From: Octopus sinensis
Taxonomy: Eukaryota
DNA: 64,000 nt
Assembly (NCBI RefSeq): GCF_006345805.1
Contig: NC_043001.1
Coordinates: 122,078,001-122,142,000, forward strand
Reading direction: 5' to 3'
Position numbers and translations under genes: made by a program. A model generated the notes under the pieces. It saw only the letters and a list, made by a program, of their open reading frames with translations. It searched no databases and was not told where the DNA came from. Positions 30,218 through 58,162 of the stretch are shown piece after piece (the first letter of the stretch is position 1; each line of letters opens with the position of its first letter).

Positions 30218-30293
30218 GAGTGAGAGTGTTGCAGGTAGTGAGGAGACGGTACCACGTCGCCCTGGCCAGTATACAGAGTCCCCACCACCAGCA
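30218..30293 (+). CDS. ttyh: Internal exon of the Tweety-like gene (SESVAGSEETVPRRPGQYTESPPPA)
   Basis: atttcag acceptor, GCA|gtaagt donor, 76 nt, phase 2/0. Joins 2704 as TT|G = Leu. ESPPPx recalls TTYH3 ESPPPSY and TTYH2 ASPPPTY. Confidence 0.78.
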
Positions 30294-30333
30294 GTAAGTA
30301 AACTATATCCATTTGTCAGTCACTAAATATATA

Positions 30334-30378
<45 letters not shown>

Positions 30379-30418
30379 GTATGTATATATATATGTACCT
30401 TGTCTGTTTTTCACCCAG

Positions 30419-30505
30419 ACTGCTACCACTACCTCTACCACCACCACCACCACCACCACCAGCATTTCACCTTCACTCCCTCTTCAAAGTCTTTCCTTCA
30501 TGTAA
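30419..30505 (+). CDS. Candidate proximal alternative last exon (TATTTSTTTTTTTTSISPSLPLQSLSFM*)
   Basis: tgtctgtttttcacccag acceptor 125 nt after the 30293 donor, open in phase 0. Largely an (ACC)n repeat, so it may be a chance match. Confidence 0.2.
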   Translation, partial: TATTTSTTTTTTTTSISPSLPLQSLSFM

Positions 30506-30709
30506 CTTTCATGAACACCAAAAAAAAAAAAAAATTGCAAAAAGGTAAAACAAATGGTAGAAGATATATTGGTGTTTGGTTGTTCCTTTATCTTTCCCCT
30601 TTGACTCTTTCTCTCTCTCTCTTTCTCTCTCTATCTCTCTCTCTCTTTCCCTCTCTTTTGTAGTCCTGGAAACTTGAAAAAACTTTTTTCCATTTGTGAT
30701 TTGTCTGCC

Positions 30710-30773
<64 letters not shown>

Positions 30774-31119
30774 TAAAGAAGGAGGTCTCTAAGTGGTTAC
30801 TGAACCTTCTAGAGATAGGTGTCAAATCTCTCAAATCACACCTTATGTTTTTAAATAGGAAGGACACATTGTATAATCTAGTCATAAAGGTACAGACTGA
30901 AAGCAAGACCAGATGGTTGCGGCTAGAATGTCCTTGATCATTGATCAGGTTGATCAGAACTAGCCCGGGGCTAAACTGCAACAATGTGTTCTGTAAGGAA
31001 GAAAAAGCATACTGAAGTGAAATTCACTATTCTATTGGATTTATACAAATTCCAATGAACTTATTTATTTCTGGCAAATAAAATACAGGATACAAGATAT
31101 ATGTAAGGTAAATTTAGAT

Positions 31120-31278
31120 GCAGCAATTAGGAAGGGCATTAGGAAGGGCATCCAGCTGTAGAAACACTGCCAGATCAGAATGAAGCCTGGTACAGCTTCC
31201 TGGTTCCCAGATCCCAGTGAAACCGTCCAACCCATGCTAGCATGGAAAACGGACGTTAAACAATGATGATGATGATGA
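31120..31278 (+). mobile_element. Family C element 3' part
   Basis: aggaagggcatccagctgtagaaac...cgttaaacaa(tga)n. Confidence 0.85.
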
Positions 31279-31334
31279 TATATATATATATCCCTCTCTC
31301 TCTTTTGGAGAGGCACAAGCACCTTCATGCACAT

Positions 31335-31470
31335 ATACACACACGGCAGTAACTTCCGCCTACCGAATTCAATCACAAAGCTTTGGTCGGCCCAGGTCTA
31401 TAGCAGAAGACACTTGCCGAAAGTGCTATGTGGTGGGACTAAACCCGAAACCATGTATTAGGAAGCAATA
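31335..31470 (-). mobile_element. SINE family B 5' half
   Basis: acaaagctttggtcggccc...gaagacacttgcc. Confidence 0.75.
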
Positions 31471-31909
31471 AAAACCAAGTCAATTTTGTCAGAGCACCTT
31501 TTATGTCTCAGAATTATGAGATGATATGAACACTATACTGATAAAGTACTTTACCAATTTTCTTGCACTTTGAATGCTTATAGCATTAAGCCATTCACTC
31601 AGTAGTACATGTTTACAGCTAATCAGTTTGAGTTACGGAGTACATAAGATATAAATCTATATATTTTGAAGAATTTTACATAGTACTGGTTGGTTTGACA
31701 AAATTATACTTGTATAAGTTCTGCAGGTAAAAAGGCCAGTTATTAGATTATTAGATGTTATTGCCAAGAATCTATTCCACATGAATCCAGAAATTCAGTA
31801 ATCAGTAATGCAACACTAATAGTGATGATGAGAGTAATAATGATTAATGATAATAATAATAAAATGTCTGTAATGTTAACAATACCAAAGCTATACCATA
31901 TATAGTATA

Positions 31910-32050
31910 GAAAGCTATAACCACATGGTTGTGGGTTCGATTGCAGTACATGGCACCTTGGGCATGTGTCTACCATAGCCTTGGGTTGACCAATGCCTTG
32001 TGAGTGAAATTTGGTAGACGGAAGCTGTGCAGAGATTCCGTCGTATATGT
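31910..32050 (+). mobile_element. SINE family B-like 5' half
   Basis: ggcaccttgggc...gccttgtgagtgaaatttggtagacggaa. Confidence 0.75.
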
Positions 32051-32584
32051 ATGTATGTATAAATATATATATATGTATGCATGTGTGTGTATATCTTCCA
32101 CGGGCATATATTGATGAAAAATGTAAATATCGGCGAGAAAACTGCTAAACTGGTGCTTTCGAATGAAAATCCCTTGTGATATTTGTTCTGCCCGAGTTAC
32201 ACAGACAATCCCTTGTCACTCTTGCCATCGTAAATGCAGTGAACCAGTAATTGGCCCGTTGGAAACCTATAACCAACGAAGCTATTTTTTCACAAAATGC
32301 AATATATAACTATAAAAATAAAAATATATATATATATATACTTATATATACAAAACACATATTGGGTCTATTTAACCAAATTTCTTACATACTCTCTACC
32401 TCATATATTAGTGCCATACTACAGATCAGCTTTTAGAATTCATCATTTCTGCAAGACATCCAGATAGTTTGGTAAATATGGTGAACAAGTCTTCATATTT
32501 CACTGTATAATTTCTGTCATTGGTGTGAGGCACACATTCCATTGCTGCTTGTGATAGCTTGCTATATAATTTTTAATTTGTGTC

Positions 32585-32615
<31 letters not shown>

Positions 32616-32807
32616 GCATATATATATATACATATAAACACTTTGAATGCGCAGTAGATATTAAACAGTTTTGTCTTGCAAACTATTTCCTTGTGATTGC
32701 ATGTTTGATATATTTGACATTTACTATTGTTAATTATTATTATTATTTTTTTTTTTTTATAATTATTTTCTTGTTATTGTCACATGTTTAGTTCTTTGAC
32801 CTGTAAG

Positions 32808-32850
32808 CACCTCCCATCTGAACGGCTGCTGCTGGCAAAATCAAGGATTT
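32808..32850 (+). CDS. Candidate cassette exon A (HLPSERLLLAKSRI), phase 0/1
   Basis: GC-richer island with T|gtatgt donor; acceptor (tgtaag) is weak. Confidence 0.25.
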
Positions 32851-32900
32851 GTATGTTTGCTTATCTTCCTTCTTAACTGACCATTTTTTTTTTTTCACAG

Positions 32901-32951
32901 CTTAAATCTTTTTATCAGTGCAGAATGTCATCATTGAGTAAAGAGTCTTGA
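32901..32951 (+). CDS. Candidate exon B: terminal (LKSFYQCRMSSLSKES*) or cassette to 32937 (phase 0/1)
   Basis: Strong T-tract + cacag acceptor with ttaac/ctgac branch-like sites. Internal A|gtaaag donor. Stop 32949-32951 immediately followed by AATAAA (32952-32957). Confidence 0.4.
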   Translation, partial: LKSFYQCRMSSLSKES

Positions 32952-33021
32952 AATAAAGAAAATATTAAAAGCTTATTTCTCAATATATAATATATATGTG
33001 TATGCATATATATATATTTAC

Positions 33022-33058
<37 letters not shown>

Positions 33059-33807
33059 GGATCATGGAACCCTTGCAAACATGGAACATGGACATGAAAT
33101 GATGATGATGAAGATAAAATATATATATTCAGAAATGAGCTTTTAAAATATGTCTGTATACACATATGTATGTAGATAAGTATATGTGTGTGTGTATATA
33201 TATGTATATATATATATATATATATACACACACATACATATACATACACACATATAAAATATGTATATCCAGAAATGAGCTTTTAAAATATTTATGTGCG
33301 TATGCATACATATATATATGTATAAAATACAAACTTTGTCTCAGTTTATTGGAATTATAATGAAAAAGAAAAAGAGATAATAAACTGCAATTCATAAAAC
33401 GAATATTATACATAAATATATACATACATATTCTTTTTTTTTTTCATTGTAATTTATATGGAAATAAGTTGTTTGGTTGTTTTGTCTTTTTCTCAGTATT
33501 TGATATCTTGATATTCCTGGTAAAATATCTTATTCTATGGAGAGGAGATGATATGGTTGTTTAGTTAAGTACTATTTAAATAAGTAGCTATCATAATACT
33601 TAATTATCTAAGTGTTTTAAAAAGAGTTAATAAAATTTTAAATCTTCAAACTATTGGCCTCATTTTTAGAGGTGAGAAGTATTTTAATATCTACGTCTAT
33701 GCTGTTTCCTTCAACTCTGATCTTTATAAAGTGTCTTATTCCTAGATGTGTTCTAGATTTTGTACTAGACTAGATTAAGACTATGAATATTTCATTTGTC
33801 TTACTTT

Positions 33808-34258
33808 CCAACTACATGGTTTGAGGTTCAGTCCCACTGCATAGCACCTTGAGCAAGTGTCTTCTAATATAGGCCTCAGGCCAACCAAAGCCTTGTGAGT
33901 GGATTTGGTAGTTGCCAATTGAAAGCAGGCCATCGTATATATGTATATACCGGCATAAGGCAGATGTTAAACAATGATGATTGTGATGATGGTATATATC
34001 ACACACACTCACATATAATATATGTATGTGTGTATTTGTGTCTGTGTTTGTCCCCCCACCACTGCTTAACAACTGGTGTTTGTGTGTTTATGTCCCAGTA
34101 ACTTAGTGGTTCAGCAAAAGAGACCAACAGAATAAGTAACAGATTTAAAAAAAAAAAAAAATAAGCACCAGGGTCAATGCATTCAATTAAAAGATTTTTC
34201 AAGGTGGTGCCCCAGCATGGCCACAGTCTAATGACTGAAAGAAGTAAAAGAAAAAGTA
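33808..34258 (+). mobile_element. SINE family B with a family C tail fragment in its linker
   Basis: B head and tail with ggcagatgttaaacaatgatgat in between. Confidence 0.8.
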
Positions 34259-35121
34259 TAAAAAATTCAAGTATTGTTGTACACATCCAGGACTAAGACA
34301 CCCTATGACAATCAGAGATCAAGCTAACTGTAAAGTAGTGTAGATGTAAATATTGAAAATCCAGCTCTGTCTAACTGCTCCTTTTGTGCTACCATACACT
34401 GCATGTTTGGATTTGCTTGCGTCATTTTTCTAGCAATAAGTTTCTCTAACCATTCTTTTGGCAATTTAATTGAAGATTTTTAAAATGATAAGAAGGTTTA
34501 AAAGAATCATTACTTTTCCATGCCTGTTACGTATGGCCTGTTGCTTTGAAATAGCTTATCGTGCCAGTATTAACAGGGCTTAATAGCCCATTCTGAAGAT
34601 ATTTCCAAACAGATAACAGTGGTTCTTTGACAGCATTTTGCTTCTGTTGCCTGTGATTGCCGCTTTTTGTGGAGCAGTGGCTTGGTAAAATTATTTGACC
34701 ATCAAATTTCAAGAAAAGAGTTTGGTAGTTTATCAGAAAAAAGAAAGGAAAAAAAAAGGAAAAAAGAAAAGAAGTTCTTTTTGTTTCTCTATTTGTCATT
34801 TGCCCGAAGTTCAGTGATTGTATATTCTTTCGTTATTTATTCTATCATTTACAAAAACTGTTACAAACTACACAGTGTTTTTTTAAAAGTTTTTATGCTG
34901 TCTTAAGGTTGGTTGCTGTCAGAAATTGGTGTAGTTCCACATACAGGTGGAATAGTGGAATGTATGGTAAAACATCCAAAATGTTGTATGCTTGACTATT
35001 ATAGATTCGTAAAAAAGGGGCATTATTACTCTTATCTCTTTAGAGAAATGTGTGTGGTCACATTCATACCTTTCCCAAAGGTATTTAAATGCATATGAAG
35101 AATCACTACAATTTTACTTCA

Positions 35122-35315
35122 CACGTGCTGGTGGCATGTAAAAGCACCCACTACACTCTTGGAGTGGTTGGCCTTAGGAAGGGCATCCAGCTGTAGAAAC
35201 TCTGCCTGATCAGATTAGAGCCTTGTGTAGCCATCTGGTTTGCCAGTCCTCAGTCAAATCGTCCAACCCATGCTAGCATGGAAAGTGGACGTTAAACAAT
35301 GATGATGATGATGAT
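35122..35315 (+). mobile_element. Family C element
   Basis: ttaggaagggcatccagctg...ggacgttaaacaa(tga)n. Confidence 0.88.
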
Positions 35316-35639
35316 ATTTGTTTTAACTCAACATAATGAATGTGAAATATATATTGTAACAGCAGTGTGTATTTTGACAGGCTAGATGTAATATTAGATG
35401 TGATTTTAAGACACTAACATGTATTGTGACAGATATAGATGTGAAGTATTGTGGAGCTTTGCTTAAAGCCATGTAAACAGATGAAAAAAAAGAGGATCAT
35501 ACGTGCTTGGTTTATGCAGTTACTAATTTATCCTATATTTTTATCAAATTAGAACAGACTAATATGTTTATTGTAAGCTTAGTTACAGAATAGCTTTTGA
35601 ATTCAGTTGTTGCTTTGTTATGCAATAATATAGAAAAGG

Positions 35640-36115
35640 AATTTTTGTATTTGGTTTGCAAGACTCTTGAAGTGAACCTGTGTTTTGAAACAGATTTTGT
35701 TGAATCTTGGGAGGGTTATTATAATAGAACACTGGTTCTATTTCATTTCTTTTAGTCAGTTTGCTAGCTATTTAACAATTAATTTATTGCTTGAGTAATC
35801 ATTCAGTTAATCAATCAACTAGCTAGGTTCATCAAAGTCCTATTCTTACCAATTACAACTTCATCAATGCCATGCCCTCTGTGCCCAAGGATTGCTTCAG
35901 ATCTAAAATGGAAGGCATGCCATTAATGAGGTTTTGATTGGTGACAAAAAGACTTTGACAAACGTTGTTGGTTGATTGATTGGATGAACAATTACTCAAG
36001 TAGTCAATTAGTTATTTGGTTATCTAGTTTAATAATAATAACAACAATAATCATAACAAAGAAGTGAAATGCAACCGGTGCATGGGTTTTTTTATTGACA
36101 TAATGACCTTCCTAA
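35640..36115. repeat. Old repeat with internal palindrome, copy 1
   Basis: ctggttctatttcatttc...gaagtgaaatgcaaccgg inverted ends (35733-36078); ctaggttcatca and tttattgacataatgaccttcc shared with 57080-57590. Confidence 0.7.
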
Positions 36116-37275
36116 GATGCAACGAAATAGGAAAGACATTCCATAGTCTATTATGTCACTTTGTGTTTAAGTAAGTGTGAGTGAGTTAGAAGCTGGATGT
36201 TACATCTTTAGATTTTAATTGATGATTGATGGTATTACATAAAATTTTTTTTTTTCCTGAAGAACTGCAGTTTTTGTCTTCCTGTCAAAAACGTTTCAAT
36301 CAATTTTCTTTCTGATGACATATTCACTGATATCTGCCCTAATCTAGCTTGTAGAAACCCTGTAGTAAAACTCCTGGCTAAGTAGCTAATCTGCTTTGTA
36401 GTTTCCAGTGTATTTAATGTCTTAACTACTCATTTCTCCACTCTGTTCTTGTTGTACTGTTCTGTTATCATCCATTTGCTTTAAGCCCTGGAAGGAAGAT
36501 CACACTTAAGCACCATTTGTCTTAAGCTCTGGAAGGAAGATATATCATGCCTAAATACCAATTGCCTTAATATTTTGAAAGAAGATAGAATATATTACCC
36601 AGTGGGTCAATAAATTCATCTTTGTTTATTTATCCAGTTTTTGTTTCTAAATATAATGTGTTTTGGTAAAATGATTTCCCCGCCAAAAATGTGTCATGAA
36701 ATTACAAGGCATTAGTGGAGTCCCAATATTATGTGATTAGACATTTTTACAACATATCAAAGTTTGGAAGGCAGCTAATTTAAATATGAAGAGACTTTGT
36801 CCAAATGTGACATCTTTGTTGATCACATATCAACACACACACACACACACATATCTACAATTGCATATAGGCTGTGCATACTCTTGTACATATGAGCACT
36901 CACACATGTTGGCATACAATACACACTTGCAAACATATGCTTCCTTTCTCATGCACATGGATATACACACTCCTGCTCATGTACACATATGTATATAATT
37001 ATACATATACTAAAAAATATTGACAAGCATTCTCAATATATAGAATCATTTTATCAATAAAATGTGGTATTATAAAAAATATATTCAAATATAGATACTT
37101 GAATCTAAAGAATTGTTTCGATATATATATATATATTATATATATATTATATATATATATATATAATATATATATATATAAAATAATAATAATAATAATA
37201 TTAGGGAGTATAGCTCCAACTTACATGGAAAAATTCGATTTAGTATTAAATCAAATTTCACAGTATGTATATATA

Positions 37276-37306
<31 letters not shown>

Positions 37307-37391
37307 AAATAATAATAATATAATAATATTAGGGAGTATAGCTCCAACTTACATGGAAAAATTCGATTTAGTATTAAATCAAATTTCACAG

Positions 37392-37437
<46 letters not shown>

Positions 37438-37819
37438 GTTATAGTAGATAATTAAGTTTGTTTATGTAATTTGAAATATAGATCACAGCATCTTCAGCAA
37501 GGAGTTTACTTTAGTTTAACTTGAGTCTCAATCTCTCTGACAAACAAGATCTTTTAATGAATAGTAGAAAATAAACTGAAATAAGACAAAATAAAAAATG
37601 CAATGAAACAACAGAAAACTTCCGTTTTTGATATTAGCACCCATTTATGTTTAACCTCTGTCTCATTCTTAAGCTTCTTGTTGCTCTTGTTATAGCACAC
37701 CAAATTTTCTTTTATTTCATAAATGTATTTTGTTTTTTAGTTTCTAACTAAATCAGGGATTAACCAGTTTGATATAAGCTTTAGGGAGAGTTTACGAAAA
37801 GAAACAAAAGACGAAGACA

Positions 37820-39519: not shown

Positions 39520-39594
39520 TACAGCCTGCTGTGTTATAATGAACCAGCCTTCCTGCATGACGACACACCAGCTATAGTTTCAAGTGAAGCGTGA
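39520..39594 (+). CDS. ttyh: Last exon, proximal isoform (YSLLCYNEPAFLHDDTPAIVSSEA*)
   Basis: gtgttccag acceptor; phase 0 start with TAC completes SPPPAYS; GC-richer island; stop 39592-39594; AATAAA hexamers from about 39930 onward. Confidence 0.65.
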   Translation, partial: YSLLCYNEPAFLHDDTPAIVSSEA

Positions 39595-42500
39595 CCATGT
39601 TGCTGTTGTGATCACCCAAGTATGTCTGAAAACTTGGGCATTTCCTCTGTGTCATTTCCAACCAATATGTAGCTTTGGAATTGTCCCTTCTCTTCCTATT
39701 AGTATCTCCTTTTACTGTTCTTCTGCTTGTTTCTTCCACACATCCCCACCATTCACCTAATGTGCACCCTTCTTATTAACTAACGGCTGACACTACTGAA
39801 CTCATATTTTTTTCTGTGTCTCTTATGTTTGCCTAATAGCAATGAGAAATGGTTGATGCTAAATGTCCAGTTATCTACCTTTTATATTGATTCGGTTGAT
39901 ATTTTTTGTTTGTGTTTTGTTTTATGAAGAATAAATAATAAAAAAAAGCCATGGTGATGATGATGATGAATAAAATTTGTCAGAGCAATAAAGTAGTGAT
40001 GCCTTTTGGAAAAAATTGAAAAAAAAATTGAAAATTTTAAGAAAATATTCCAAAGAAAACTCTTTATCTGAAGGCAGTTAGTTCTGTAGTTTAACAGATA
40101 ATAGCTTCAAGGATTTAATTAACCCACAACCATATCCACATGACTGTCTATTTCCTTATAAAGGGACTTCTGCAAAAAGATTGAATAATTGAGGGGTAAA
40201 GGGACAAAGGTAATGGAAGAGTCAGTTGTTAGAAGAATTCAAAGGAGAAAAATTTCTTTAGACTTGAAGAGGATCAAGAGATGTGGATGATAAATCAGTT
40301 TATAACAATTATATTGAATTAATAATTTCAATAGCTTATAAAAGTAAAATTGTAATTACTTACACATAATTTAATTTGATTCAAGTAACTTTCATCACAG
40401 CATCAACCCGTTTTATTGTACCCTAGTGTCTTTTGAAGCACTTTCTGGAAAATGTTTTGATATTATACACATTTTTTTCTACAGTTTTTGTCTTTAACAG
40501 ACTTTCGTAATAAGTGTTTCATAACTTTTAATATTGTCTCAATTTGCTTCCTGTTTGCTAATCTGATAATGTAACCTGCTACCAACAAATCTTACCTCCA
40601 TATTCTCTCTCCCCTCTCCATACTCTCTCTCTTCCTCTCTCTCTCTCTCTCCTGTCCTATCTCTCACTCCTTTCCTTTCTTTCTCTCTCATGTTATGTAA
40701 AAATCTAAAACTCAGAAATATTAAGAAAGTCTTAAGAATTTAGTATATGCCGTTTTTGAAGGTATGGAGGGAGTGTATAGGTTATGTGCAGCAAAATATG
40801 GTGTATATTCTTTAGATTGGAAGAAATTTCAGTTTTGGCACTGCATTAAATCAACCATAAAACCTTCCTGCCAATGGCTAAGTAGCTCAAGAATATACCC
40901 CCAAAAAATATTCTTGCTTTTCCCATTTATTATACTACCAAGTAATTGGGGTTTAATTCAAGTCAGTGGTGGAATGCAAATTCTTGGAAACTTCAGCAAG
41001 AAATAGCATCATAAACAGCAAGCCATTGTCATGTCATAACACTTCAATATTTGATCATTATTGATACTTCTCATTATTTTATTCAAAAAACTTTCTCTGA
41101 AATTGAAAGTAAGCACTGCAATATGGTCACAGTCTAAGTGTTTGTGATGAATGGTTTATAAGTTGGTATTTTTGTGGAATATTAAACTCCTCTTTTGAGA
41201 TGAAAAAGTTTTTACTATTTTTATCTATGCCATGTTTCTATTTGTTTGATCTTTGATCATTATCATGTGTCTTATTCTTAGATTGTACATAGTACATAAG
41301 TAGTTTAGAATAGGAAATCCTTATTTCTAAACTACAGAATAATGACTATTTTTATTGAATTAGCGATTGTCCTATTTATAACCATTGTTATAATTTTAGG
41401 TTACTTATAATTACCTTTCAGTAATGGCAACCATATTGATTCAATACCAACATTGGTTTTACTGAACAGGTTTATTAATAAATATTTCTTGTTCCATTTA
41501 TGATAAGAGTTTTATGTTTATCAACTCTCTGCAATAAATGTTAGAATAATGTTTCTGAAGTGCTATTAAAATTCTCCTTATTCTTTCTCAGACCTGTTAA
41601 CTTAAATTTGCTAACAGTGTAGACTCTATACCAATTAAATTCCTATATACCTCATTGTTAATGTTACAGTGAGGATTTTCCATGTTTTCTCAGACTTCCC
41701 TTTCCTTTTCATCATTGAGTCATGCTTGACTGGTCCAGTCATATTAATACATGTGGAATAACATTAATAACACATAGTGGTGGCCCTAAATAAGATGTCC
41801 TTCTTATTAGTAATAACAGTGATATCAATAGTTTTAATAAGTTGTCCTATTAAAAACATTTGGTGATTTATTGTTTATCCTCAACTAAGTCGTGCTCAAT
41901 CAAATCTATAAGACAATCCAGACGTGCACATCTTGTCTTTTTATCTGTTAGTGTCTACATTACCTTTACCACATACAACTCCCCTTATTTAAGGTGGTAG
42001 GGTGTGATTTAAGACAGGTCATGTGATTACATAACAGCTTCCTATTTGGTTTGTTTTTTGAAGCATAGGCTTACTTTGTAGCTATTCAGTCAGTTTCAAG
42101 TATGACTTTTTTTAGGGACTTTATTTTTGACTCCTTGTTCTATTTAAATACCTTTTCACAATGGTCTAACACTTATTTCTACAACTTTTGCAGACTAAAT
42201 TATACGTTCAGAAAATCTCTTTACAGTTATTATCCATTTGAAATTGTAGTTACAACTTCTGAAGCCAACTCTGCATAAACATTTTGCTATAAATACTTCA
42301 GGCTTTTTACTGTGCCCAGTTTTGTGTGAAATTACACCATACTTCCGTGAACAATATTCATTATAGCTACTTCTATGCTGTTTACACAACATGGTTGTGT
42401 AAATAAAACTCTGGATTGTCAGGGATCCTGTTGTAAGTCTATAGTCTCATTGAATTGAACACATAATTCTTTATGGCTTATGTTCATCTTAAAATGGAAA

Positions 42501-44079: not shown

Positions 44080-44335
44080 ATCTAATTTCTCCCACCCCTG
44101 TCTGCTAAAGTATAGCATCTCCTTTTTCTTTCTTCTGCTTTTCAGTATGCCGATTGGTTCCTCCGTGAACGCTTTTCTGCGGCCAACAAACTTGGCTGAT
44201 CTTTTCACTGTCCATACGTTGGCATATTGCTTACAGGCTGTGCCACAGTGTGAGAGCCTGTCTATCGAGCTGGCCTCCTGGATGGTTAGCTTGCTTGCCT
44301 TTGTTTGACCCCCTGTATGAACACACCTTTGCATG
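44080..44335 (-). mobile_element. LINE ORF2 linker fragment (RTE/L2-like), tentative
   Basis: KRSAKFVGRRKAFTEEPIGILKSRRKKK resembles the basic endonuclease-RT linker. Confidence 0.3.
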
Positions 44336-49280: not shown

Positions 49281-49661
49281 TTTCCATTATTGCTTTGCGC
49301 ACCTTCTCATAAATTCTCATTAGAATTTTCTTTGACCTTCTGTTTCTGTTTGACTGTATCTTTTATTTTACTCAGGCGCATGTATACACACAAAAATAAA
49401 GATATAATTATAAAATATTTGTTTATAATGAAATAGTGAAAGAAAGAAAAAAAAGACAAAAAAAAAATAGCCAGAAGAGACAGCTTCTTTCTGATTAGAT
49501 TCCACAATTTCCAATTTACTGTGTAACATGACTGTTTTGCAGTTTCCAAACAGAAGGAGTCGAAAACTTTAGAATCCTTTTACATGGAGCTGATCAGTAA
49601 GAAGACTATAAAACTCTAAAAGTTTTGTATCATTGGAGCTGCATCAAAGCCCTCAAAGTAC

Positions 49662-50906: not shown

Positions 50907-51130
50907 ATTTATGTGTAAAGAGGAATTACAATCCTGTTGCAGGGTACAGAATTTCTCAATTCTTTTTTTCTACGTCTTGAATAAAATAAAAAAAAAAAAA
51001 AAACCCTGCTAATCCAAGAATTGCCATGGTTTTATGCGTATCTGTTTAAAAAATAAACTGCTTTTCATTTGTAGATGAACATAGTTATAAAGAGAAACTT
51101 TTTTTTATGTATGTGCGATATATACATACA

Positions 51131-51168
<38 letters not shown>

Positions 51169-51188
51169 TACATATATATACTTATGTA

Positions 51189-51222
<34 letters not shown>

Positions 51223-51489
51223 CTTATGTATGTATATATATATATATATACTTATGTATGTATATATAACGTGTATGGATGTATGGAATTATTTCTTCAT
51301 TTTCCATTATCTCCCTATCTTTCATTTATTTCCTTTTATGTCTCTGCATTCAACTCTTTCTCCAAATTTCTCTCTTTTTCTGTCTGTCTGTCTGTCTGTC
51401 TGACCATCTCTCTCTTTCTTTCTCTCTCTCTCTCTCTCTTCCTCCCTTTCTCTCTCTCTCTCAATCCATTCCATTCCATTCTATTTCAG

Positions 51490-51530
51490 CATGGAAAAGG
51501 ATTCTTGGCCTAACGTCTTGTCTTCTATGA
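51490..51530 (+). CDS. Candidate alternative last exon (phase 0 HGKGFLA*; phase 1 xWKRILGLTSCLL*)
   Basis: Long (CT)n pyrimidine tract + ctatttcag acceptor followed by a higher-complexity, GC-richer block. Confidence 0.25.
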
Positions 51531-52146
51531 TGCTTGTATCTCTCAAGTTCTTTGGCTGAAGAATTATCTGCTGAATTCTGCTTCCATTTCCATTCAACAT
51601 GGCAGCAATGACGGCAGTCTCAGCAACAGATACTCACAAACCCATCCCACTCATCATATTTTCTGCTTACTTTCAAAGTTTCTTTTTTTTTTTTCATCCA
51701 GTAGAAATTTCCATTTGACAAATACGTGGGTTTGTGTATGTGTGAATGTTAGTGTGAGAGTGCGTGATTCAATTGTTCTATATATTTCATTAAAAAAAAA
51801 ACCCCTAAAACTAATACAAATGAACTTAACATCTCATTCCATCCGTCAGCTCATTATCCAGCATATTCAACATATTAATTTTATATTCATTTTTCTCAAG
51901 TTTGATATAAAATAGATTTAAAAAGAAAAAAAACAGATTCAACTGGAAAGCATGTTTGTCTGTGTATTAGAATAAATTTGTTTCTGTATATATTCATATA
52001 AGTATATATACAAACACATGTAGACCTACACACATTCTCATTCTTACTCTCTCTCTCTCACACACACACACATGCATGCATGCATACATACATTTACACG
52101 CAAGCAGGCATACATACATACATGTGTACATATATGTGCTTATACG

Positions 52147-52178
<32 letters not shown>

Positions 52179-53713
52179 GTGTGTGTGTGTGTAAATATGT
52201 ATGTGTGTATATATATATATATGTATGTATATATGTCTGTATATATATGTATATATGTCTGTATATATATATATATATTTCTGTGTGTATATATATATAT
52301 ATGTCTGTGTTTATATATATATATATGTCTATGTGTGTGTGTTTATATATATATATATATGTCTATGTGTGTGTGTGTGTTTATATATATATATATGTCT
52401 GTGTGTGTGTGTTTATATATATATATGTGTGTGTGTGTGTATATATATATGTATATAGGTGAAATTAAAATAAGCTTAGTGATTATGAAAGACTAATGCT
52501 CAAACAGATGAGACCTTGAGCTCCAACTTTATCTAGGGCCAGTGCCTGTCTCACCATTGAAAGTTAGCTGTAAGAATAATCCATATCGAGCTGTTATGGA
52601 GGTGATAAAGTAGATAAACACAGTTACGCTTGAAATATATATTTACATAGAACACAAAAATACAGATTACAGAATAAATAAAAGAAGAAAGCAAAATGGA
52701 AGAGAAGGATTATGAAAAGTCTTGACAGTTGTTTCAAGATGGCCATAAGTTATGTAATAACCATATTCATAAATAATATGCGGATGGTGCCCTAGGTATG
52801 TATCCTGTGACAAATCCTATGAAATTGCTAAAGTAAGCTAGCATCCCTTTCCAAGAGGTTATTACATAAGTTACATCCATCTTGAAACAGCTGTTGAGAT
52901 ATAATCCTTCTCTTCTGTTTTGTTTGACCTTCTTTTTGTTATCTGTGTTTTGTGCTCCATATATCTCAAGCCTAACTTTATAACTTCCTTACTACCTCTG
53001 TTTGTCTTTCTCCTACCCCATATATATATATATAATATATATATATTCGTTTAGAGTTTGTGTTATCCTCATGAAGGGATGGTTTCATCCAAGAAAATAC
53101 TGGTTCAATAACTAGTATTTTGGGGGAAGTAATTTTCCTAAAATGATAGGTATATATATATAAAAACTTAGTTTATATTCACATAAGAGAAGAAAAAGAT
53201 TTAGTCTGCTATAATGAATCCATAGACATATAAAACATACAAGGGTATATATACCTTTATATAAATATGTATATGCATGTGTGAGAATGTATATATGTGT
53301 AAGTGTATGTACTTTAAGTGGCCAGTGGTATAAATGTGGACAATTTAGACAAAGTTGTATCAAATACTATGTATGATATATTCTTGATTTATTGAAATGA
53401 TCTTCACTTCAAGATAAGAATAAAGAAATCCTCTGTTGCTATGGCATAGATGAGGAAGGGAGATAATTTCAATAACTTTAGAAATGTAATAAAATGGGGA
53501 CACTGTTATGGCAAAGAGAGTCTGATTGATCAGAGACAAGAGAATAACCATGAGATATATTTCGACATCAATAGGGCATTATCAGCACAGAAGTTGTTCC
53601 AATGAGACAACATGTGTGTATGTGTATATAAATATATGTATATTTTTATGTATTTATAAATAAGTATATGTGTGTGTGTGTGTGCATATATATGTATGTG
53701 TATGTATATGTGT

Positions 53714-54001
53714 GGAGGCGCAATGGCCCAGTGGTTAGGGTAGCGGACTCGTGGTCATAGGATCGCGGTTTCAATTCCCAGACCGGGTGTTGTGAGTGTT
53801 TATTGAATGAAAACACCTAAAAGCTCAACGAGGCTCTGGCAGGGGGTGGTGATGATCCCTGCTGTACTCTTTCACCACTCTTTTTTCTGTTGGCCTGCTC
53901 GCTTAGCCAGCAGGGTGGCGTCATTCAAAGGCTAAAACAATGCGAACGCATTGTGACCAGCAATGTGTAGCAACATCTGATGGTCTGGTCGGTCACGTGA
54001 T
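53714..54001 (+). mobile_element. tRNA-derived SINE family D
   Basis: ggaggcgcaatggcccagtggttaggg (A box TGGCCCAGTGG), ggtttcaattcc (B box), unique body ending ggtcggtcacgtga; embedded in (TA/TG)n. Confidence 0.85.
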
Positions 54002-55017
54002 GTGTATGTATATATGTACACACACACATATATATACTTATATGAGTGAGTGGGTAAATGAAAGAAGAAGCATTCAACACATTTGATTTGGTAGGGGTTG
54101 CATAAATTATTTTAAAAAATATTTTTTAAATATCATAATAATAATAAAAATAATCATATATGTCTTCTTTTGATTCTTGAAGTGGGATGTTGTATGATAG
54201 TTTCCCATTTCCTTACACAATTCTTTGCATTTATTTCAACTCTACGAGGTCCTTTGAGCTGTTGGCTAGTAGAGGGTACCCATAGTGCTGCATAATGTGG
54301 TCTGCTTCTCAACATTTACAGGTGTGTGGACCAGTCTTGCAGTCCCATTTGACCACAGTATCTATTGATCACTCAGTTCTTTATTTACAGGCAGTTATGT
54401 GTCTTCTACTAAATCCATGGTGTCTCTGAGACAGGAGAGAAGCCTCCAGAAAGTAGGGCTCCTGTATTGATTGGAAGAGGGTCATTATCAAGCTTTTCCA
54501 TCCAGATCTGGAGACATGTTTCTTCCCGAGAGGTTGTTGGGGTTTGGACATGACTGAGAAACTTTCTTGACTTTACTTGTTGGGCCAGAAGTTGACAACT
54601 ATAGAGGAGGCGGCATTCATCATTTGTATATATACATACACATACACTTGGATATATGTATGTATCCACATATAAATATATGTGTATGTAAGCATGTATA
54701 TGCATATATATGTATGTATAAATACATGTGTATTTATATATGTTTGTCTATACATATAGGTGTGTGCAGTTTTATGTATGTGCAAGCATGTCTGTGTGAT
54801 TCTGTCTGATTGTAAGCAAACATTTTGTTAGCATTTGTTTGCAATTTCCTGGGTAACTTATCCAAACTAAGGGGAAAATATAGCCTTGCTTGGAAAAAGG
54901 TACAGGCTGTTGAGAGGAAGACCATTTAGCTGCAATAAATAGGTCTCAAAGATGTCTCAAATGTGTCTGATTCATGCTAGCTTGGAAAAATAGGTGTTCA
55001 AATCATGATGATTATGC

Positions 55018-55361
55018 TCTCTGTGGCCATGCTGGAGCACTGCCTTTTAGTCAAAGAAATCGACCCCTGGACTTATTCTTTGTAAACCTGGTGCTTAGCC
55101 TATTGGTCTCTTTGGTGAACCGCTAAGTTACATGGACATAAACACACCAACATCAGTTGTCAAGTGATGGGGGACAAACACACACACACACACATATATG
55201 ATGGACTTCTTCCAGTTTCCGTCTACCAAATCCACTCACAAGGCTTTGGTCAGCCTAAGGCTATTGTAGAAGACTCTTGCCCAAGGTGCCCTGCAGCGGT
55301 TCTGAACCCTAAACCATGTGGTTGGGAAACAAGCTTCTTACCACACAGAGACACCTGCACC

Positions 55362-55363
<2 letters not shown>
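55018..55363 (-). mobile_element. SINE family B, near full length
   Basis: Reverse complement of family B with (CA)n linker. Confidence 0.88.
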
Positions 55364-55394
<31 letters not shown>

Positions 55395-55513
55395 CTATGA
55401 TGCATCATTACTCTTGTGGATTCCCAGGTCAATGCATCAGCTGTCACTCTGGGATTGTATTACCTTTGTTCCTGTGTATTCTGATTGCAATCTGTGGGCT
55501 TATTGTGGAACCC

Positions 55514-55938
55514 TTTTTTTTTTTTAAGTATCAGCTCAGAGCTGCAGCCATGCTGATGCACTGCCGTTTTGCGCTACACTGTTATTACTAGGAGCCTCCT
55601 CTAATATATGACACTTGATGAAGAATGGAATTTGATATAGCTACCCTCATTTGCACCTCTTGCCGTGAGGTGGGCTCATCTGGGACTCTCGACAGGAAGA
55701 GGTCCAACTTTGATTTAAAAGCCCCTACATCTACTTTGTGCAAGTTCCTCAGACTCTTTGGGAGAATATTAAAAAGCTGTGGGCCCCTGAAACCCAGGCT
55801 GCTCCAGTAACTGGTCCTGAAGCGTAATGGCATTGCTGGGATCTTTGGCACTTGAAAATTTTTAGCTTTGAACTGCATGTTATTTTCTTCTGCCCACTTG
55901 TATATTGCATTCAGGTCATTTTGTAGTTTTACGTTTTC
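55514..55938 (-). mobile_element. CR1-clade LINE 3' end with internal deletion and poly(A)
   Basis: LQNDLNAIYKWAEENNMQF (RT thumb) fused to RFRTSYWSSLGFRGPQLFNILPKSLRN...FKSKLDLFLSRVPDEP; short 3' UTR; A-tail at 55514-55525 (T-run on +). Confidence 0.88.
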
Positions 55939-56296
55939 ATAAGTGTGTGTGTGTGAGAGAGAGAGAGAGAAAGAAAGAAAAAGAAATTGGTTGTGTATCA
56001 GAGTCAAAATAAGAGCATTTATCCATATGAATATCGTGAGGACGTATAATATCATTCAATATTGATCATATAACAAATGCTGGCCATGAATCTGAGTTTT
56101 GTGTAAAAACTGATGCTCTACACTCTTCAGATGGCATATTAGGGTTTTAAGTTGAACACTGTAGTGTTTACCTTAAATCCATAGCATGTTATCCTGTTGA
56201 GCACTAGGCATCGGCTATACATGAGATTCAGTGTCATAGCAATTGTTTGTTAGTAGGATCGTCATTAAACTAGTATATATATATATATATATATGT

Positions 56297-56447
56297 GTGT
56301 ATATTTAGAGTTAAAACCACTAGGTGGATAACCATATGGTAGAAGAATATCACATACGATCTAACTACAAAGAAAGAATGTTCTCCAGAGAAAATCTTTT
56401 TCTAGCATATGGTTATCCACCTAGTGGTTTTAACTCTAGATATACAC
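56297..56447. repeat. Inverted repeat, about 49-bp arms (MITE-like hairpin)
   Basis: tagagttaaaaccactaggtggataaccatatg pairs perfectly with catatggttatccacctagtggttttaactcta; spacer of about 55 nt. Confidence 0.9.
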
Positions 56448-57079
56448 GTGTATTGAAATTTTTTTCTGATTCTTCAGATTTTTATATGCTAGGCTACTGG
56501 TTTTAAATTGATATTAATTAAATTAGTATTCAATTTATCTCCCTCATTATTTAAATTATATATATATACGTATATATATATATATATAACTTTTATATCC
56601 AGTCAACTTTATGTACGTAACTTAATGCATATGTACATATATAAATTAGTAGATATCTGTAATTTTTATATGTATATCAATAACATATATGTGTGTATAT
56701 AATCATTGAAACTGATCATGTATATCTGTGTATGTGTGCATCAGTGTTTTTCTTTCATATTTCTTAATATTTAGATATGACATTATTTTAATTAGAAATG
56801 GCTGAGATTTAACTCTCAGTTCTTCATCCATTTTTGGTCTTACCTTATCTTTTTGTATTTTCATTCGTCTGATATTCTATCTATGGAATATTTACGATGT
56901 TATCTGTGTAATTCATGAAAACAAGGTCATCTCATTATTCTTACTTGATTTGATTTTGAAAGTATTTGACTCATGGCTATGAATCACCAAAATTTATCTT
57001 AGATTTTTGTTTGGAACACATTCTTCATTAATAATTATGAACGCTATTCAGATTTTTAATATTGATAATTTCATGTTTG

Positions 57080-57590
57080 TGTTTTGGTTTACAAAATTTT
57101 TGATGTCAAATCATGCATTGAAACAGGCTTTACTGTATTTTGGGAGGGTCAATATACCAATAATAAACACATGCTGGTTCTATTACACTTCTTTTATTAT
57201 TATTAGTCAACTAGTTAATTACTTAATCAATTAACTAATTGATTGTTTAGTCAATCAATCAATCAGCTAGGTTCATCAGAGTCCTTTAAGCCCCATTTGC
57301 AATCTCTTCAATGACATGTTCTCTATACACCAGGCTGGTTTCCTTGTCTACAGATTTGAGGTTAAGTTTTCCTACTTGGAGCAGACTTGGATTAGAGAGG
57401 ACTTGGATTAGAGAGGACTCGGATTAGAAGCTGCAAGAGTTGATGTAAAGTCTTTGATGAACTAGCTGATTCATTGATTGACTGAGCTGTGAATTAGCTA
57501 ATTAACTGGTTAATTACTTGACTATTAATAATAAAAGAAGTGAAGCAGAACCAATGCATGCGTTTTTATTGACATAATGACCTTCCCAAG
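57080..57590. repeat. Old repeat with internal palindrome, copy 2
   Basis: Inverted ends ctggttctattacacttcttttattatt / aataataaaagaagtgaagcagaacc (57174-57554); homologous to 35640-36115. Confidence 0.7.
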
Positions 57591-57988
57591 ACATAGCATA
57601 ACATTAACAAGTTTACATGTAAATAGCTAAATTTAAGTATTGACTAGCTTAACAATATTTCCTTCCCACAGACAATACTTACACTCTAATTTAGTATTGG
57701 AAACATTTTAAAAAGCAATTTTCTTATGTATTTTGTTGTATTTTTTAAGCCTGTATTAGATGAAGCTAGATGTCAAGAGGAAACTGGTAAGGTAGAATGT
57801 TTAGGTCACAGAGGCTCTTTTGTTAAATAGTAACTTCTAATATCTATGTGTTAACCTTATTCTCAGACATCTCTATAAAGATCATTGCTGTGCTGTCACT
57901 GATGCTGCTATTGCCCTAATTGCAGCTACTGTTGCAGTAGCGGTACTGCTAAACTTCTCCCCTTTGAAGACCTGTCCTTGTATTTCAG

Positions 57989-58162
57989 TACACAACGATG
58001 CAGACCGAAAAGCACTGGGACCCTTTGCTGCCAGTTATATGTGAAGTTGTGCCGTCACCATCACCACCACCACCACCACCAATCTCAACAACACCACCAC
58101 CAACTCCACCACCTCCGCCGCCACCACCACCACCAATGCCAATCCCTTTACCCAATCCCTAG
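57989..58162 (+). CDS. ttyh: Last exon, distal isoform (YTTMQTEKHWDPLLPVICEVVPSPSPPPPPPISTTPPPTPPPPPPPPPPMPIPLPNP*)
   Basis: ctgtccttgtatttcag acceptor; phase 0 TAC completes SPPPAYTT; Pro frame kept through synonymous CCA/CCT/CCG changes; GC-rich island; AATAAA near 59014-59100. Confidence 0.6.
   Translation, partial: YTTMQTEKHWDPLLPVICEVVPSPSPPPPPPISTTPPPTPPPPPPPPPPMPIPLPNP

What the first reader, a model, noticed from the sequence alone, without database searches (positions are those of the whole stretch)
30218..58162. Intron-split PY motif with an array of alternative last exons: a possible splicing switch for Nedd4 control of a Tweety-like protein
Seen: exon 30218-30293 ends at SPPPA|, and two well-formed acceptors 9 kb and 28 kb downstream (39520, 57989) both start with TAC, completing PPAY but adding unrelated tails. 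Other phase-0-compatible exits (read-through VSKLYPFVSH* to 30326, 30419, 32901, 39525, 51490) omit the Tyr. An upstream PPPY (exon 2582) is kept in all of them. Known: TTYH2/3 PY motifs bind Nedd4-2 WW domains. Inference: last-exon choice sets one versus two PY motifs and swaps the C-terminal ligand, tuning turnover and localisation. I know of no description of this in cephalopods.
Basis: partly seen in the sequence, partly recalled or inferred. Interest (0 to 1): 0.8.

Follow-up and report, generated by a model that had tools for sequence, protein, structure and literature searches.

The report
Octopus Tweety gene: alternative tail exons
This is the 3' end of an octopus Tweety (TTYH) membrane-protein gene, where an ancient intron splits a ubiquitin-ligase docking motif (PPAY) just before its tyrosine, and several alternative final exons, three of them starting with that tyrosine, give the protein different tails; it is real and already in gene annotations, but nobody has described it.

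Summary
Exons 2582-2704 and 30218-30293 join in frame and match the C-terminus of annotated Octopus TTYH proteins exactly (Pfam Tweety E 2.6e-78 on the cuttlefish-type relative P0001).

Every annotated tail after SPPPA maps exactly to the window:
- YSLL 39520
- YTTM 57989
- HGKGFLA 51490
- read-through 30294
- a 60-nt cassette at 32412-32471, also missed
- FFDL 32792
- FPNRRSRKL 49543

Cuttlefish genomic DNA has the same exon order. Cuttlefish RNA contigs show the shared donor spliced either to YSLL or to YADW. The intron between PPP[A/C] and Y is also present in gastropods and a chiton, so it is ancestral in molluscs.

All isoforms conserved beyond Octopus keep the Tyr. Tyr-less forms appear only in Octopus gene models and in an odd Haliotis variant. 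The best reading is therefore a tail swap that preserves the PY motif, with a possible lineage-specific PY on/off option. Binding to Nedd4 is untested.

This is a new member of a known kind and of moderate interest.

The parts
2582..2704 (+). Constitutive exon A of the TTYH gene: the end of the Tweety domain (YYPVDDTDPF) and the first PY motif, PRPPPY.
   Evidence: It is identical to Octopus TTYH isoforms. It is 79% identical in DNA, and 40 of 41 aa identical, to cuttlefish L004 53059-53183.
30218..30293 (+). Constitutive exon B, ending ...TESPPPA in phase 0 at a GTAAGT donor. It carries the first four residues of the second PY motif.
   Evidence: Against cuttlefish, 8 codons are identical, 11 differ synonymously and 6 differ non-synonymously.
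30294..30326 (+). Read-through (intron-retention) tail VSKLYPFVSH*. It has no Tyr.
   Evidence: It is the tail of the O. vulgaris model CAI9723434.1 (P0023). Conservation with cuttlefish stops about 20 nt past the donor.
32412..32471 (+). 60-nt cassette exon CHTTDQLLEFIISARHPDSL (phase 0 to 0, ag|..|gtaaat). Including it turns PPPAY into PPPAC and removes the second PY motif, while any tail can still follow.
   Evidence: Found in O. sinensis X1, X3 and X4, in O. vulgaris, and in O. bimaculoides X2 and X3. No counterpart in cuttlefish.
32792..32806 (+). Short exit FFDL*. It has no Tyr.
   Evidence: It is the tail of O. bimaculoides isoform X8 (P0017). It has an exact match with an ag acceptor and a stop codon.
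39520..39594 (+). Alternative terminal exon YSLLCYNEPAFLHDDTPAIVSSEA*, probably the ancestral last exon. Its acceptor tract is weak and GU-rich.
   Evidence: Found in O. sinensis X5 and O. vulgaris. The cuttlefish orthologue is L004 96416-96487, with a conserved acceptor and stop. Cuttlefish RNA contigs L001-L003 carry at least 1.6 kb of 3'UTR colinear with the genome. The tail resembles other mollusc tails: an aromatic residue at +5 and a C-terminal SSE[A/T/S].
39615..39638 (+). Conserved inverted repeat CCCAAGT..ACTTGGG in the 3'UTR, 21 nt after the YSLL stop codon.
   Evidence: The same arms occur in cuttlefish. Both fold as a 7-8 bp hairpin, but the energy is not exceptional.
44146..44199 (+). 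It has the strongest pyrimidine tract of the array and is the most conserved alternative exon.
   Evidence: Found in O. sinensis X6 and O. bimaculoides X5. The cuttlefish orthologue is L004 109945-109998, 13 of 17 aa identical, with 8 synonymous against 4 non-synonymous codon differences, including TAT versus TAC for the Tyr. The protein carrying this tail is indexed in 84 blocks of RNA-seq assemblies, and the contigs splice exon B directly to it.
49543..49572 (+). Short exit FPNRRSRKL*, seen only after the cassette. It has no Tyr.
   Evidence: It is the tail of O. bimaculoides X2 (P0024). It has an exact match with a cag acceptor.
51490..51513 (+). Short exit HGKGFLA*. It has no Tyr.
   Evidence: Found in O. 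sinensis X4 and X7 and in O. bimaculoides X3 and X7. No cuttlefish counterpart was found.
57989..58162 (+). Alternative terminal exon YTTMQTEKHWDPLLPVICEVV followed by a proline-rich stretch encoded by a CCA/CCG repeat. It gives PPAYTTM and a poly-Pro tail.
   Evidence: Found in O. sinensis X1 and X2 and in O. vulgaris. In the Argonauta hians model P0019 this tail is 57 of 57 identical, while the rest of the protein differs at 35 of 489 positions. No counterpart lies within the 10 kb of cuttlefish sequence available downstream of YADW.

Best explanation
The window holds the 3' third of an Octopus Tweety-homologue (TTYH) gene.

Two constitutive exons encode the cytosolic tail just after the last membrane helix. 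Exon A (2582-2704) carries a complete PY motif, PPPY. Exon B (30218-30293) ends with PPPA, so an intron falls exactly before the tyrosine of a second PY motif, PPAY. That phase-0 intron is ancestral in molluscs.

In coleoid cephalopods the single downstream exon has become an array of alternative terminal exons spread over 28 kb. The donor at 30293 can pair with 39520 (YSLL..SSEA, probably the ancestral tail), 44146 (YADWF..) or 57989 (YTTM.. plus poly-proline). Each of these begins with a Tyr codon. So the conserved isoforms all keep two PY motifs and differ in two things: the residues just after the shared Tyr (YSLL, YADW, YTTM) and the C-terminal end.

Inferred mechanism: the proximal exon has a weak GU-rich acceptor and the next exon a strong one, which fits regulated choice among alternative last exons, each with its own 3'UTR. 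The swap would change which cytosolic partners read the region around the Tyr. WW domains would always be able to bind. YSLL and YTTM fit the YxxΦ (Φ = bulky hydrophobic residue) sorting-signal pattern, YTTM also fits the SH2-type YxxM pattern, and the poly-Pro tail could bind other ligands.

On top of this, Octopus gene models include a 60-nt cassette (32412-32471) and several short exits that replace the Tyr and leave one PY motif. These may be a lineage-specific off-switch or low-level by-products.

Shown here: gene identity, exon coordinates, junction use in cuttlefish RNA, conservation, and the age of the intron. Inferred: regulation, partner binding, and any effect on ubiquitination or trafficking.
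For: Identity:
- The 66-aa joined peptide hits full-length Tweety proteins at E 5e-30.
- Pfam Tweety scores E 2.6e-78 on the relative P0001, and the Octopus proteins carry a precomputed PF04906 domain.
- Octopus X1 matches solved TTYH2 and TTYH3 structures at E 1e-40.

Exons: all annotated tails map exactly to the window with canonical splice sites.

RNA evidence: cuttlefish contigs splice exon B to YSLL, with a 3'UTR colinear with the genome for at least 1.6 kb, or to YADW, skipping YSLL. YADW is in 84 index blocks and YSLL in 3 runs.

Synteny: the cuttlefish locus has the same exon order.

Selection: the YADW exon has 8 synonymous against 4 non-synonymous codon differences, and its Tyr-Ala-Asp codons all differ synonymously. 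The Argonauta YTTM tail is 57 of 57 identical.

Tyr-first enrichment: 3 of 7 annotated acceptors against a background of about 5%, P about 0.003.

Ancestral intron and motif: PPP[A/C]|Y is split by a GT..AG intron in Gigantopelta, Biomphalaria, two Haliotis species, the chiton Liolophura and cuttlefish. All the molluscs sampled have both PY motifs.

Background from papers: TTYH2 and TTYH3 are regulated by Nedd4-2 (PMC8273234 and PMC2824488, citing He et al. 2008).
Against: - No octopus RNA reads could be examined. Octopus isoforms rest on RefSeq and GenBank gene models only.
- Poly(A) sites are not mapped. AATAAA is everywhere in this AT-rich DNA, so 'terminal' is shown only for the cuttlefish YSLL exon.
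- The YSLL tail is only about 43% identical between octopus and cuttlefish.
- The YTTM tail is half low-complexity, and its only outside support is an Argonauta model built by an unknown method.
- YADW does not fit a known Tyr-based motif.
- Contig counts in assemblies are not expression measurements.
- Homology of the second PY motif to the vertebrate TTYH2/3 PY rests on a non-significant local alignment (ESPPPA to ESPPPSY).
Confidence: 0.7

Rival explanations
1. Choice of last exon, or exit, is a regulated switch between one and two PY motifs that tunes Nedd4-family ubiquitination and turnover of TTYH.
For: - Octopus gene models in three species include Tyr-less products: the cassette exon plus any tail, [20 protein letters not shown] and the read-through. 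They leave only PPPY.
- Haliotis models in two species insert DFQ exactly at the same junction (PPPA|DFQ|Y), which also destroys PPAY. This hints at a recurring toggle at this intron.
- ErbB4 CYT-1/CYT-2 is a precedent for a PY motif that splicing switches on and off (PMC4303208).
Against: - None of the Tyr-less exons has a detectable cuttlefish counterpart.
- All 8 cuttlefish-type RNA-derived proteins keep the Tyr.
- The Tyr-less tails are 4-10 aa, about what random sequence gives after an acceptor.
- The Haliotis DFQ form needs a non-canonical GT..AT intron in both genomes.
- There are no read counts and no binding data.
Confidence: 0.25
2. The alternative terminal exons are selected mainly for their different 3'UTRs, which would affect mRNA localisation, stability or translation, for example in neurons. 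The peptide tails are secondary.
For: - Each alternative exon brings its own downstream sequence.
- The cuttlefish YSLL transcript has a 3'UTR of at least 2 kb.
- A short inverted repeat right after the YSLL stop is conserved between octopus and cuttlefish.
Against: - The YADW coding part shows synonymous-biased divergence, and alignable sequence conservation fades soon after its stop codon.
- Tyr is the first codon in all three conserved exons.
- Apart from the hairpin, no 3'UTR conservation was detected by BLASTN.
Confidence: 0.2
3. Most of the array is splicing noise or annotation artefact in a long, repeat-rich 3' region. Only one product is functional.
For: - By a crude rule, 166 acceptor-like sites lie downstream of the donor.
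- Several annotated tails are very short.
Against: Two alternative exons (YSLL and YADW) are conserved in sequence, order and use between octopus and cuttlefish lineages. This is incompatible with pure noise for those two.
Confidence: 0.1

Closest known systems
Vertebrate TTYH2/TTYH3 and their C-terminal PY motif, regulated by Nedd4-2 (He et al. 2008, as cited in PMC8273234 and PMC2824488)
   Same: - Same protein family (Pfam Tweety; PDB TTYH2 and TTYH3 at E 1e-40).
- A cytosolic C-terminal tail with an (E)SPPPxY string. Human TTYH3 reads ESPPPSY in the alignment.
- The DDxDPF stretch after the last helix aligns with TTYH2.
   Different: - Molluscs have a second, upstream PY motif (PRPPPY) that was not seen in the aligned TTYH2 sequence (DPFNPQA).
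- The alternative Tyr-first terminal exons are documented here only for cephalopods.
- Whether vertebrate genes have an intron at PPPx|Y could not be tested.
- RefSeq names the octopus gene 'tweety homolog 1-A', but it scores closer to TTYH2 and TTYH3 than to TTYH1 (4.5e-34).
ErbB4 CYT-1/CYT-2 isoforms
   Same: Alternative splicing decides whether a cytosolic PPxY motif is present, and in CYT-1 that motif sits in a 16-aa stretch that also holds a p85 SH2 binding site (PMC4303208). By the general YxxM consensus, the octopus YTTM exon creates PPAYTTM, which has the same overlapping layout.
   Different: - In ErbB4 a 16-aa cassette carries the whole motif. Here the motif is split by the intron, and the Tyr is supplied by whichever terminal exon is chosen.
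- No phosphorylation or binding data exist for TTYH.
Alternative last exons that rewire C-terminal short linear motifs (the general phenomenon)
   Same: One donor, several mutually exclusive 3' exons each with a stop codon and its own 3'UTR, giving different tails.
   Different: - All the conserved alternatives are constrained to start with the same codon, because an ancient intron cuts through a motif.
- The intron is older than the exon array: it is present in chiton and gastropods, where the gene models seen (and, for Haliotis, every listed isoform) use a single last exon.
Vertebrate TTYH splice variants (two to five per gene, functional relevance unknown; PMC8273234)
   Same: The TTYH family is already known to be alternatively spliced and to vary most at the C-terminus.
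   Different: No link between splicing and the PY motif is reported there, and there are no cephalopod data.

Membership tests
Tweety / TTYH family (Pfam PF04906) | Match to the Tweety domain above the gathering score | tested here: met
   P0001, 89% identical to the window peptide, scores 264 bits at E 2.6e-78. Octopus isoforms whose last 66 or more residues are identical to the window carry PF04906. The window peptide alone gives no Pfam hit, because only the last few domain positions lie in exon A.
Tweety / TTYH family (Pfam PF04906) | Sequence similarity to solved TTYH structures across the membrane domain | tested here: met
   Octopus X1 against TTYH2 (7rtt) gives E 1.1e-40, against TTYH3 (9qnr, 7p5c) about 1e-40, and against TTYH1 (7p5j) 4.5e-34, covering residues 9-439. 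The membrane exons lie outside the window.
PY-motif substrates of Nedd4-family HECT ligases | [L/P]PxY motif in a cytosolic segment | tested here: met
   PPPY sits in exon A. PPAY forms across the 30293 junction with the 39520, 44146 or 57989 exons. The cytosolic location is inferred from published TTYH topology and was not tested.
PY-motif substrates of Nedd4-family HECT ligases | Physical binding to WW domains and ligase-dependent ubiquitination | not testable with these tools
   Known only for human TTYH2 and TTYH3, from cited literature.
PY-motif substrates of Nedd4-family HECT ligases | Homology of the second PY motif to the TTYH2/3 PY motif | tested here: inconclusive
   ESPPPA aligns to ESPPPSY of TTYH3 only in a non-significant second HMMER domain (score -3.8). 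The motif is conserved across the molluscs sampled.
Alternative last exon (tail-swap) loci | One donor spliced to two or more mutually exclusive downstream exons, seen in RNA | tested here: met
   In cuttlefish RNA contigs the junction runs 76521 to 96416 (L001-L003) or 76521 to 109945 (L005-L010). For octopus there are gene models only.
Alternative last exon (tail-swap) loci | Each alternative exon ends in its own 3'UTR and poly(A) site | tested here: inconclusive
   The cuttlefish YSLL 3'UTR is colinear with the genome for at least 1.6 kb. YADW contigs stop at a T-run about 130 nt after the stop. Poly(A) hexamers are uninformative in this AT-rich DNA.
Alternative last exon (tail-swap) loci | Regulated (tissue- or stage-specific) usage | not testable with these tools
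   No read-level RNA-seq access. Contig counts of 84 against 3 suggest only that YADW is the common form in cuttlefish.
Splicing-toggled PY motif (ErbB4 CYT-1/CYT-2 type) | Isoforms with and without the motif produced from one gene | tested here: inconclusive
   Present in Octopus gene models (the cassette at 32412-32471 and the short exits). Not seen in the 8 cuttlefish-type RNA-derived proteins, and the cassette is absent from the cuttlefish locus. The Haliotis DFQ variant needs a GT..AT intron.

The most novel reading that the evidence does not exclude
The phase-0 intron that cuts the second PY motif before its tyrosine is an ancient regulatory hinge, at least as old as the molluscan ancestor. 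Different lineages would exploit it with different splicing devices:
- Tyr-first alternative terminal exons in coleoids
- a 60-nt cassette in Octopus
- a 9-nt acceptor shift in abalone

These devices would either re-contextualise the shared Tyr (WW-binding PPAY combined with a YxxΦ sorting-signal pattern, where Φ is a bulky hydrophobic residue, a YxxM pattern or a poly-Pro tail) or delete it. That would give cell-type-specific control of TTYH ubiquitination, endocytosis and signalling.
Probability: 0.2. Interest if true: 0.6.

Novelty: new member of a known kind. Interest (0 to 1): 0.4.

Why it matters
TTYH proteins are abundant in nervous systems, and their molecular role is disputed: ion channel or something else. 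The only regulatory handle cited in the reviews read here is Nedd4-2 acting on TTYH2 and TTYH3.

A motif split by an ancient intron, with every conserved alternative exon forced to begin with the same tyrosine, is a clean natural experiment. It shows which part of the tail is indispensable (PPAY) and which part evolution lets vary (everything after the Tyr). It gives concrete peptides and isoforms to test for WW, AP-2 or SH2 binding.

It is also a worked example for genome annotation: alternative terminal exons as short as 17 codons can be recognised by conservation across more than one cephalopod order.

Tried and rejected
- **Short-peptide searches.** The 66-aa peptide gave nothing in the word-index protein search, in PDB or in Pfam. 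Only the full HMMER scan identified it. The word index missed proteins that are 100% identical.
- **Dscam-like docking and selector RNA pairing** downstream of the 30293 donor. Conservation with cuttlefish ends about 20 nt into the intron (GTAAGTAAA..CTATAT) and then becomes an AT microsatellite. I dropped the idea.
- **Cuttlefish counterpart of the cassette.** The only hit, CHTTNQ at L004 86139, has no acceptor and soon runs into a stop codon. It is a chance match.
- **Origin of the alternative exons by duplication, or from repeats.** Self-BLAST finds no similarity among them or to other parts of the window.
- **Octopus and Argonauta genomic loci for DNA-level comparison.** They were not retrievable.
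- **Intron position in vertebrates.** A profile built from mollusc TTYH plus TTYH2 and TTYH3 sequence read off the PDB alignments returned only molluscs. No other collection here holds vertebrate DNA.
- **He et al. 2008 (PMC3259790).** It is not held, so I cite it only through secondary sources.
- **Poly(A) signal scan.** It is uninformative in DNA of about 30% GC.
- **Rfam on the whole window.** No family matched.
- **Conserved 3'UTR hairpin.** It is not thermodynamically unusual.
- **Micro-exon RPRQHEFELI**, seen in one decapodiform (squid or cuttlefish) RNA contig. It has no counterpart in the window or in the cuttlefish locus.
- **Second look at the isoform cluster.** It listed the same 15 of 27 members.

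Full report
**What is in the sequence**

- Exon 2582-2704 lies between ...tttcag| and |gtaagt. It starts with one base of a split codon and encodes LVYYPVDDTDPFLPRPPPYSYGTLPTAPNDPFQVDVRRSY(L).
- Exon 30218-30293 lies between ...tttcag| and |gtaagt and encodes SESVAGSEETVPRRPGQYTESPPPA, ending in phase 0.
- The two join in frame.
- The acceptors at 39520 and 57989 both begin with TAC and give two unrelated tails.
- The read-through tail and the sites at 30419, 32901, 39525 and 51490 read as described.

**Is it more than chance?**

Taken alone, no. A crude acceptor rule requires at least 10 of 16 pyrimidines, a pyrimidine at -3 and no upstream AG. It finds 166 sites between 30294 and 64000 at least as good as 39520, and 8 of them start with TAY. 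One of those six, 44146, turned out to be the most important exon of the locus.

**What the gene is**

The 66-aa joined peptide found nothing in the word-index protein search, in PDB sequences or in Pfam. A full HMMER scan of 1.84 billion representatives found two proteins that match it end to end at 89% identity (E 5e-30).
- P0001 is a 511-aa product of RNA-seq assemblies.
- P0002 is the annotated TTYH of the cuttlefish Acanthosepion pharaonis.

P0001 is a Tweety-family protein (PF04906, E 2.6e-78). Searching with it brought in 'protein tweety homolog 1-A' of Octopus sinensis. Its cluster holds 27 isoform sequences from O. sinensis, O. vulgaris, O. bimaculoides and Argonauta hians.

Across the two window exons, the Octopus proteins are 100% identical to the window and the Argonauta model differs at three residues. 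Octopus isoform X1 matches the solved TTYH2 and TTYH3 structures at E about 1e-40 and TTYH1 at 4.5e-34. The alignment runs through ...YYPVDDTDPFLPRP against TTYH2 ...YDDIDDDDPFNPQA.

**The real exon inventory**

The annotated isoforms differ only after SPPPA, and each tail maps exactly to the window with canonical splice sites.

| Window position | Product | Where annotated |
|---|---|---|
| 30294-30326 | read-through VSKLYPFVSH* | O. vulgaris model |
| 32412-32471 | 60-nt cassette CHTTDQLLEFIISARHPDSL | O. sinensis X1, X3, X4; O. vulgaris; O. bimaculoides X2, X3 |
| 32792-32806 | FFDL* | O. bimaculoides X8 |
| 39520-39594 | YSLLCYNEPAFLHDDTPAIVSSEA* | O. sinensis X5; O. vulgaris |
| 44146-44199 | YADWFLRERFSAANKLG* | O. 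sinensis X6; O. bimaculoides X5 |
| 49543-49572 | FPNRRSRKL* | O. bimaculoides X2 |
| 51490-51513 | HGKGFLA* | O. sinensis X4, X7; O. bimaculoides X3, X7 |
| 57989-58162 | YTTM...PNP* | O. sinensis X1, X2; O. vulgaris; Argonauta |

Its 30419, 32901 and 39525 are in none of the 15 members I could see; 12 others were not listed. It missed 44146 and the cassette. Three of the seven annotated acceptors begin with a Tyr codon, against a background near 5% (P about 0.003).

**Evidence from another cephalopod order**

The cuttlefish genomic locus L004 has the same layout:
- exon A at 53065
- exon B at 76447
- a YSLL-type exon at 96416
- a YADW exon at 109945

RNA-seq contigs show both junctions.
- L001-L003, from three runs, splice exon B (ending at 76521) to 96416. 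They continue colinear with the genome for at least 1.6 kb, so this exon is a true terminal exon.
- L005-L010 splice 76521 directly to 109945 and skip the YSLL exon. The protein carrying this tail is indexed in 84 blocks of assemblies.

It does not yet answer it in octopus RNA.

The YADW exon is under purifying selection. Between octopus and cuttlefish, 5 codons are identical, 8 differ synonymously and 4 non-synonymously. Tyr-Ala-Asp is written TAT GCC GAT in one species and TAC GCT GAC in the other. The pyrimidine tract is also conserved.

The YSLL exon is more diverged, at about 43% identity. It keeps its acceptor, its first four residues, its stop position and its C-terminal SSE[A/S].

The Argonauta model has the YTTM tail 57 of 57 identical, while the rest of the protein differs at 35 of 489 positions. 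I do not know how that model was built. The cassette and the short Tyr-less exits have no detectable cuttlefish counterpart, and the one CHTTNQ hit is a chance match.

**How old the split motif is**

Every mollusc TTYH retrieved has both motifs: PRPP[P/A]Y after the last helix, and [S/T]PPP[A/C/S]Y near the end. The species were the gastropods Gigantopelta, Biomphalaria, Pomacea and Haliotis, the bivalve Solemya and the chiton Liolophura.

In each of the six non-octopus genomes I could fetch, a GT..AG intron sits exactly between PPP[A/C] and Y in phase 0. These were Gigantopelta, Biomphalaria, two Haliotis species, Liolophura and the cuttlefish. The intron-split PY motif is therefore ancestral in Mollusca and is not a cephalopod feature.

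The non-cephalopod tails share a pattern: Y, three residues, then an aromatic residue. In Haliotis and Gigantopelta they also end in SSE[A/T]. The cephalopod YSLL exon fits both patterns. I therefore take 39520 to be the ancestral last exon, YADW a coleoid addition and YTTM an octopod addition. This assignment is inference.

Self-BLAST gives no sign that the added exons arose by duplication.

**A parallel in abalone**

Haliotis rubra and H. cracherodii RefSeq isoforms differ at exactly this junction: ESPPPA|YHPGRY against ESPPPA|DFQ|YHPGRY. The extra nine bases, GACTTTCAG, lie directly upstream of the normal acceptor. In both genomes they are preceded by AT, not AG. The variant therefore needs a non-canonical intron and should be verified before any weight is put on it.

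**Interpretation**

The conserved isoforms all retain two PY motifs. What changes is the sequence just after the shared tyrosine (YSLL, YADW, YTTM) and the C-terminal end. The most economical reading is a tail swap constrained to preserve PPAY.
- YSLL and YTTM fit the general YxxΦ sorting-signal pattern (Φ is a bulky hydrophobic residue).
- YTTM also fits the YxxM SH2 pattern.
- PPAYTTM has the same overlapping layout as the CYT-1 insert of ErbB4, where a WW-binding PPxY and a p85 site share a 16-residue stretch and are removed by exon skipping (PMC4303208).

These motif readings come from general knowledge of the consensus patterns and were not tested.

The weak GU-rich acceptor of the proximal exon and the strong tract of the next one are both conserved in cuttlefish. 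This fits regulated choice of the proximal exon.

It has no conservation beyond Octopus and no read-level evidence, so I rate it a minority possibility.

Nedd4-2 regulation of TTYH2 and TTYH3 is known from the literature (He et al. 2008, cited in PMC8273234 and PMC2824488). The alignment of the octopus ESPPPA to TTYH3 ESPPPSY is suggestive but not significant on its own.

**Novelty**

The isoforms are already in RefSeq and GenBank. The full-text search found no paper describing TTYH splicing in cephalopods: three papers contain both 'tweety' and 'octopus', and none addresses this by title or abstract. The family review states only that vertebrate TTYH genes have two to five splice variants of unknown relevance. 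Alternative last exons that rewire C-terminal motifs, and PY motifs toggled by splicing, are known kinds.

New here:
- conservation of two alternative exons across cephalopod orders, with RNA evidence
- the molluscan age of the PY-splitting intron
- the rule that every conserved alternative exon starts with Tyr

I rate it a new member of a known kind and of moderate interest.

**Limits**

- There was no access to octopus RNA reads or to octopus, Argonauta or vertebrate genomic DNA. The genes exceed the retrieval limit, and the profile search reached only molluscs.
- Poly(A) sites are unmapped.
- Contig counts are not expression levels.

Noticed in passing
window 39615-39638 (and L004 about 96505-96527): An inverted repeat, CCCAAGT..ACTTGGG, lies 21 nt after the YSLL-exon stop codon. 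Its arms are conserved between octopus and cuttlefish while the loop differs. It folds as a 7-8 bp hairpin, but the folding energy is not unusual (z -0.1 and -0.4).
   Followed up: partly
L013 23747-23755 and L014 24755-24763 (Haliotis rubra and H. cracherodii): RefSeq isoforms insert DFQ between PPPA and Y, which destroys the second PY motif. The nine bases GACTTTCAG are preceded by 'acat' in both genomes, so the variant implies a non-canonical GT..AT intron.
   Followed up: partly
window about 12000-15000 and 59373-60810: A satellite of about 3 kb, extremely AT-rich (GC 13%) and of TA/TATACA type, lies inside the 27.5-kb intron between exons A and B. A 1.4-kb AT dinucleotide array lies downstream of the last exon. 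Both produce long spurious ORFs.
   Followed up: no
window 55588-56055 (- strand): A 155-aa ORF between the HGKGFLA and YTTM exons looks by eye like the C-terminal end of a retroelement ORF2. Pfam gives nothing significant (DUF5894, E 0.036).
   Followed up: partly
L014 1-1396 (-) and L015 1-1290 (-): In both abalone and chiton, the TTYH gene lies head-to-head with a protein-kinase gene (Pfam Pkinase). This suggests conserved microsynteny across mollusc classes.
   Followed up: no
protein P0029 (RNA-seq assembly from a squid or cuttlefish relative): One transcript-derived protein carries a 10-aa insert, RPRQHEFELI, between exon A and exon B. This suggests a 30-nt micro-exon in that species. 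No counterpart was found in the window or in the cuttlefish locus.
   Followed up: partly
window 1096-1400 and 1546-1825: ORF translations on opposite strands share strings such as CSPAYNI and CSPACNIFG. This suggests two copies of a short interspersed repeat upstream of exon A.
   Followed up: no
method: The word-index homology search reported no candidate for a 66-aa query that is 100% identical to proteins in its own collection. Only the exhaustive HMMER scan found them. A negative from the index on a short query should not be trusted.
   Followed up: yes
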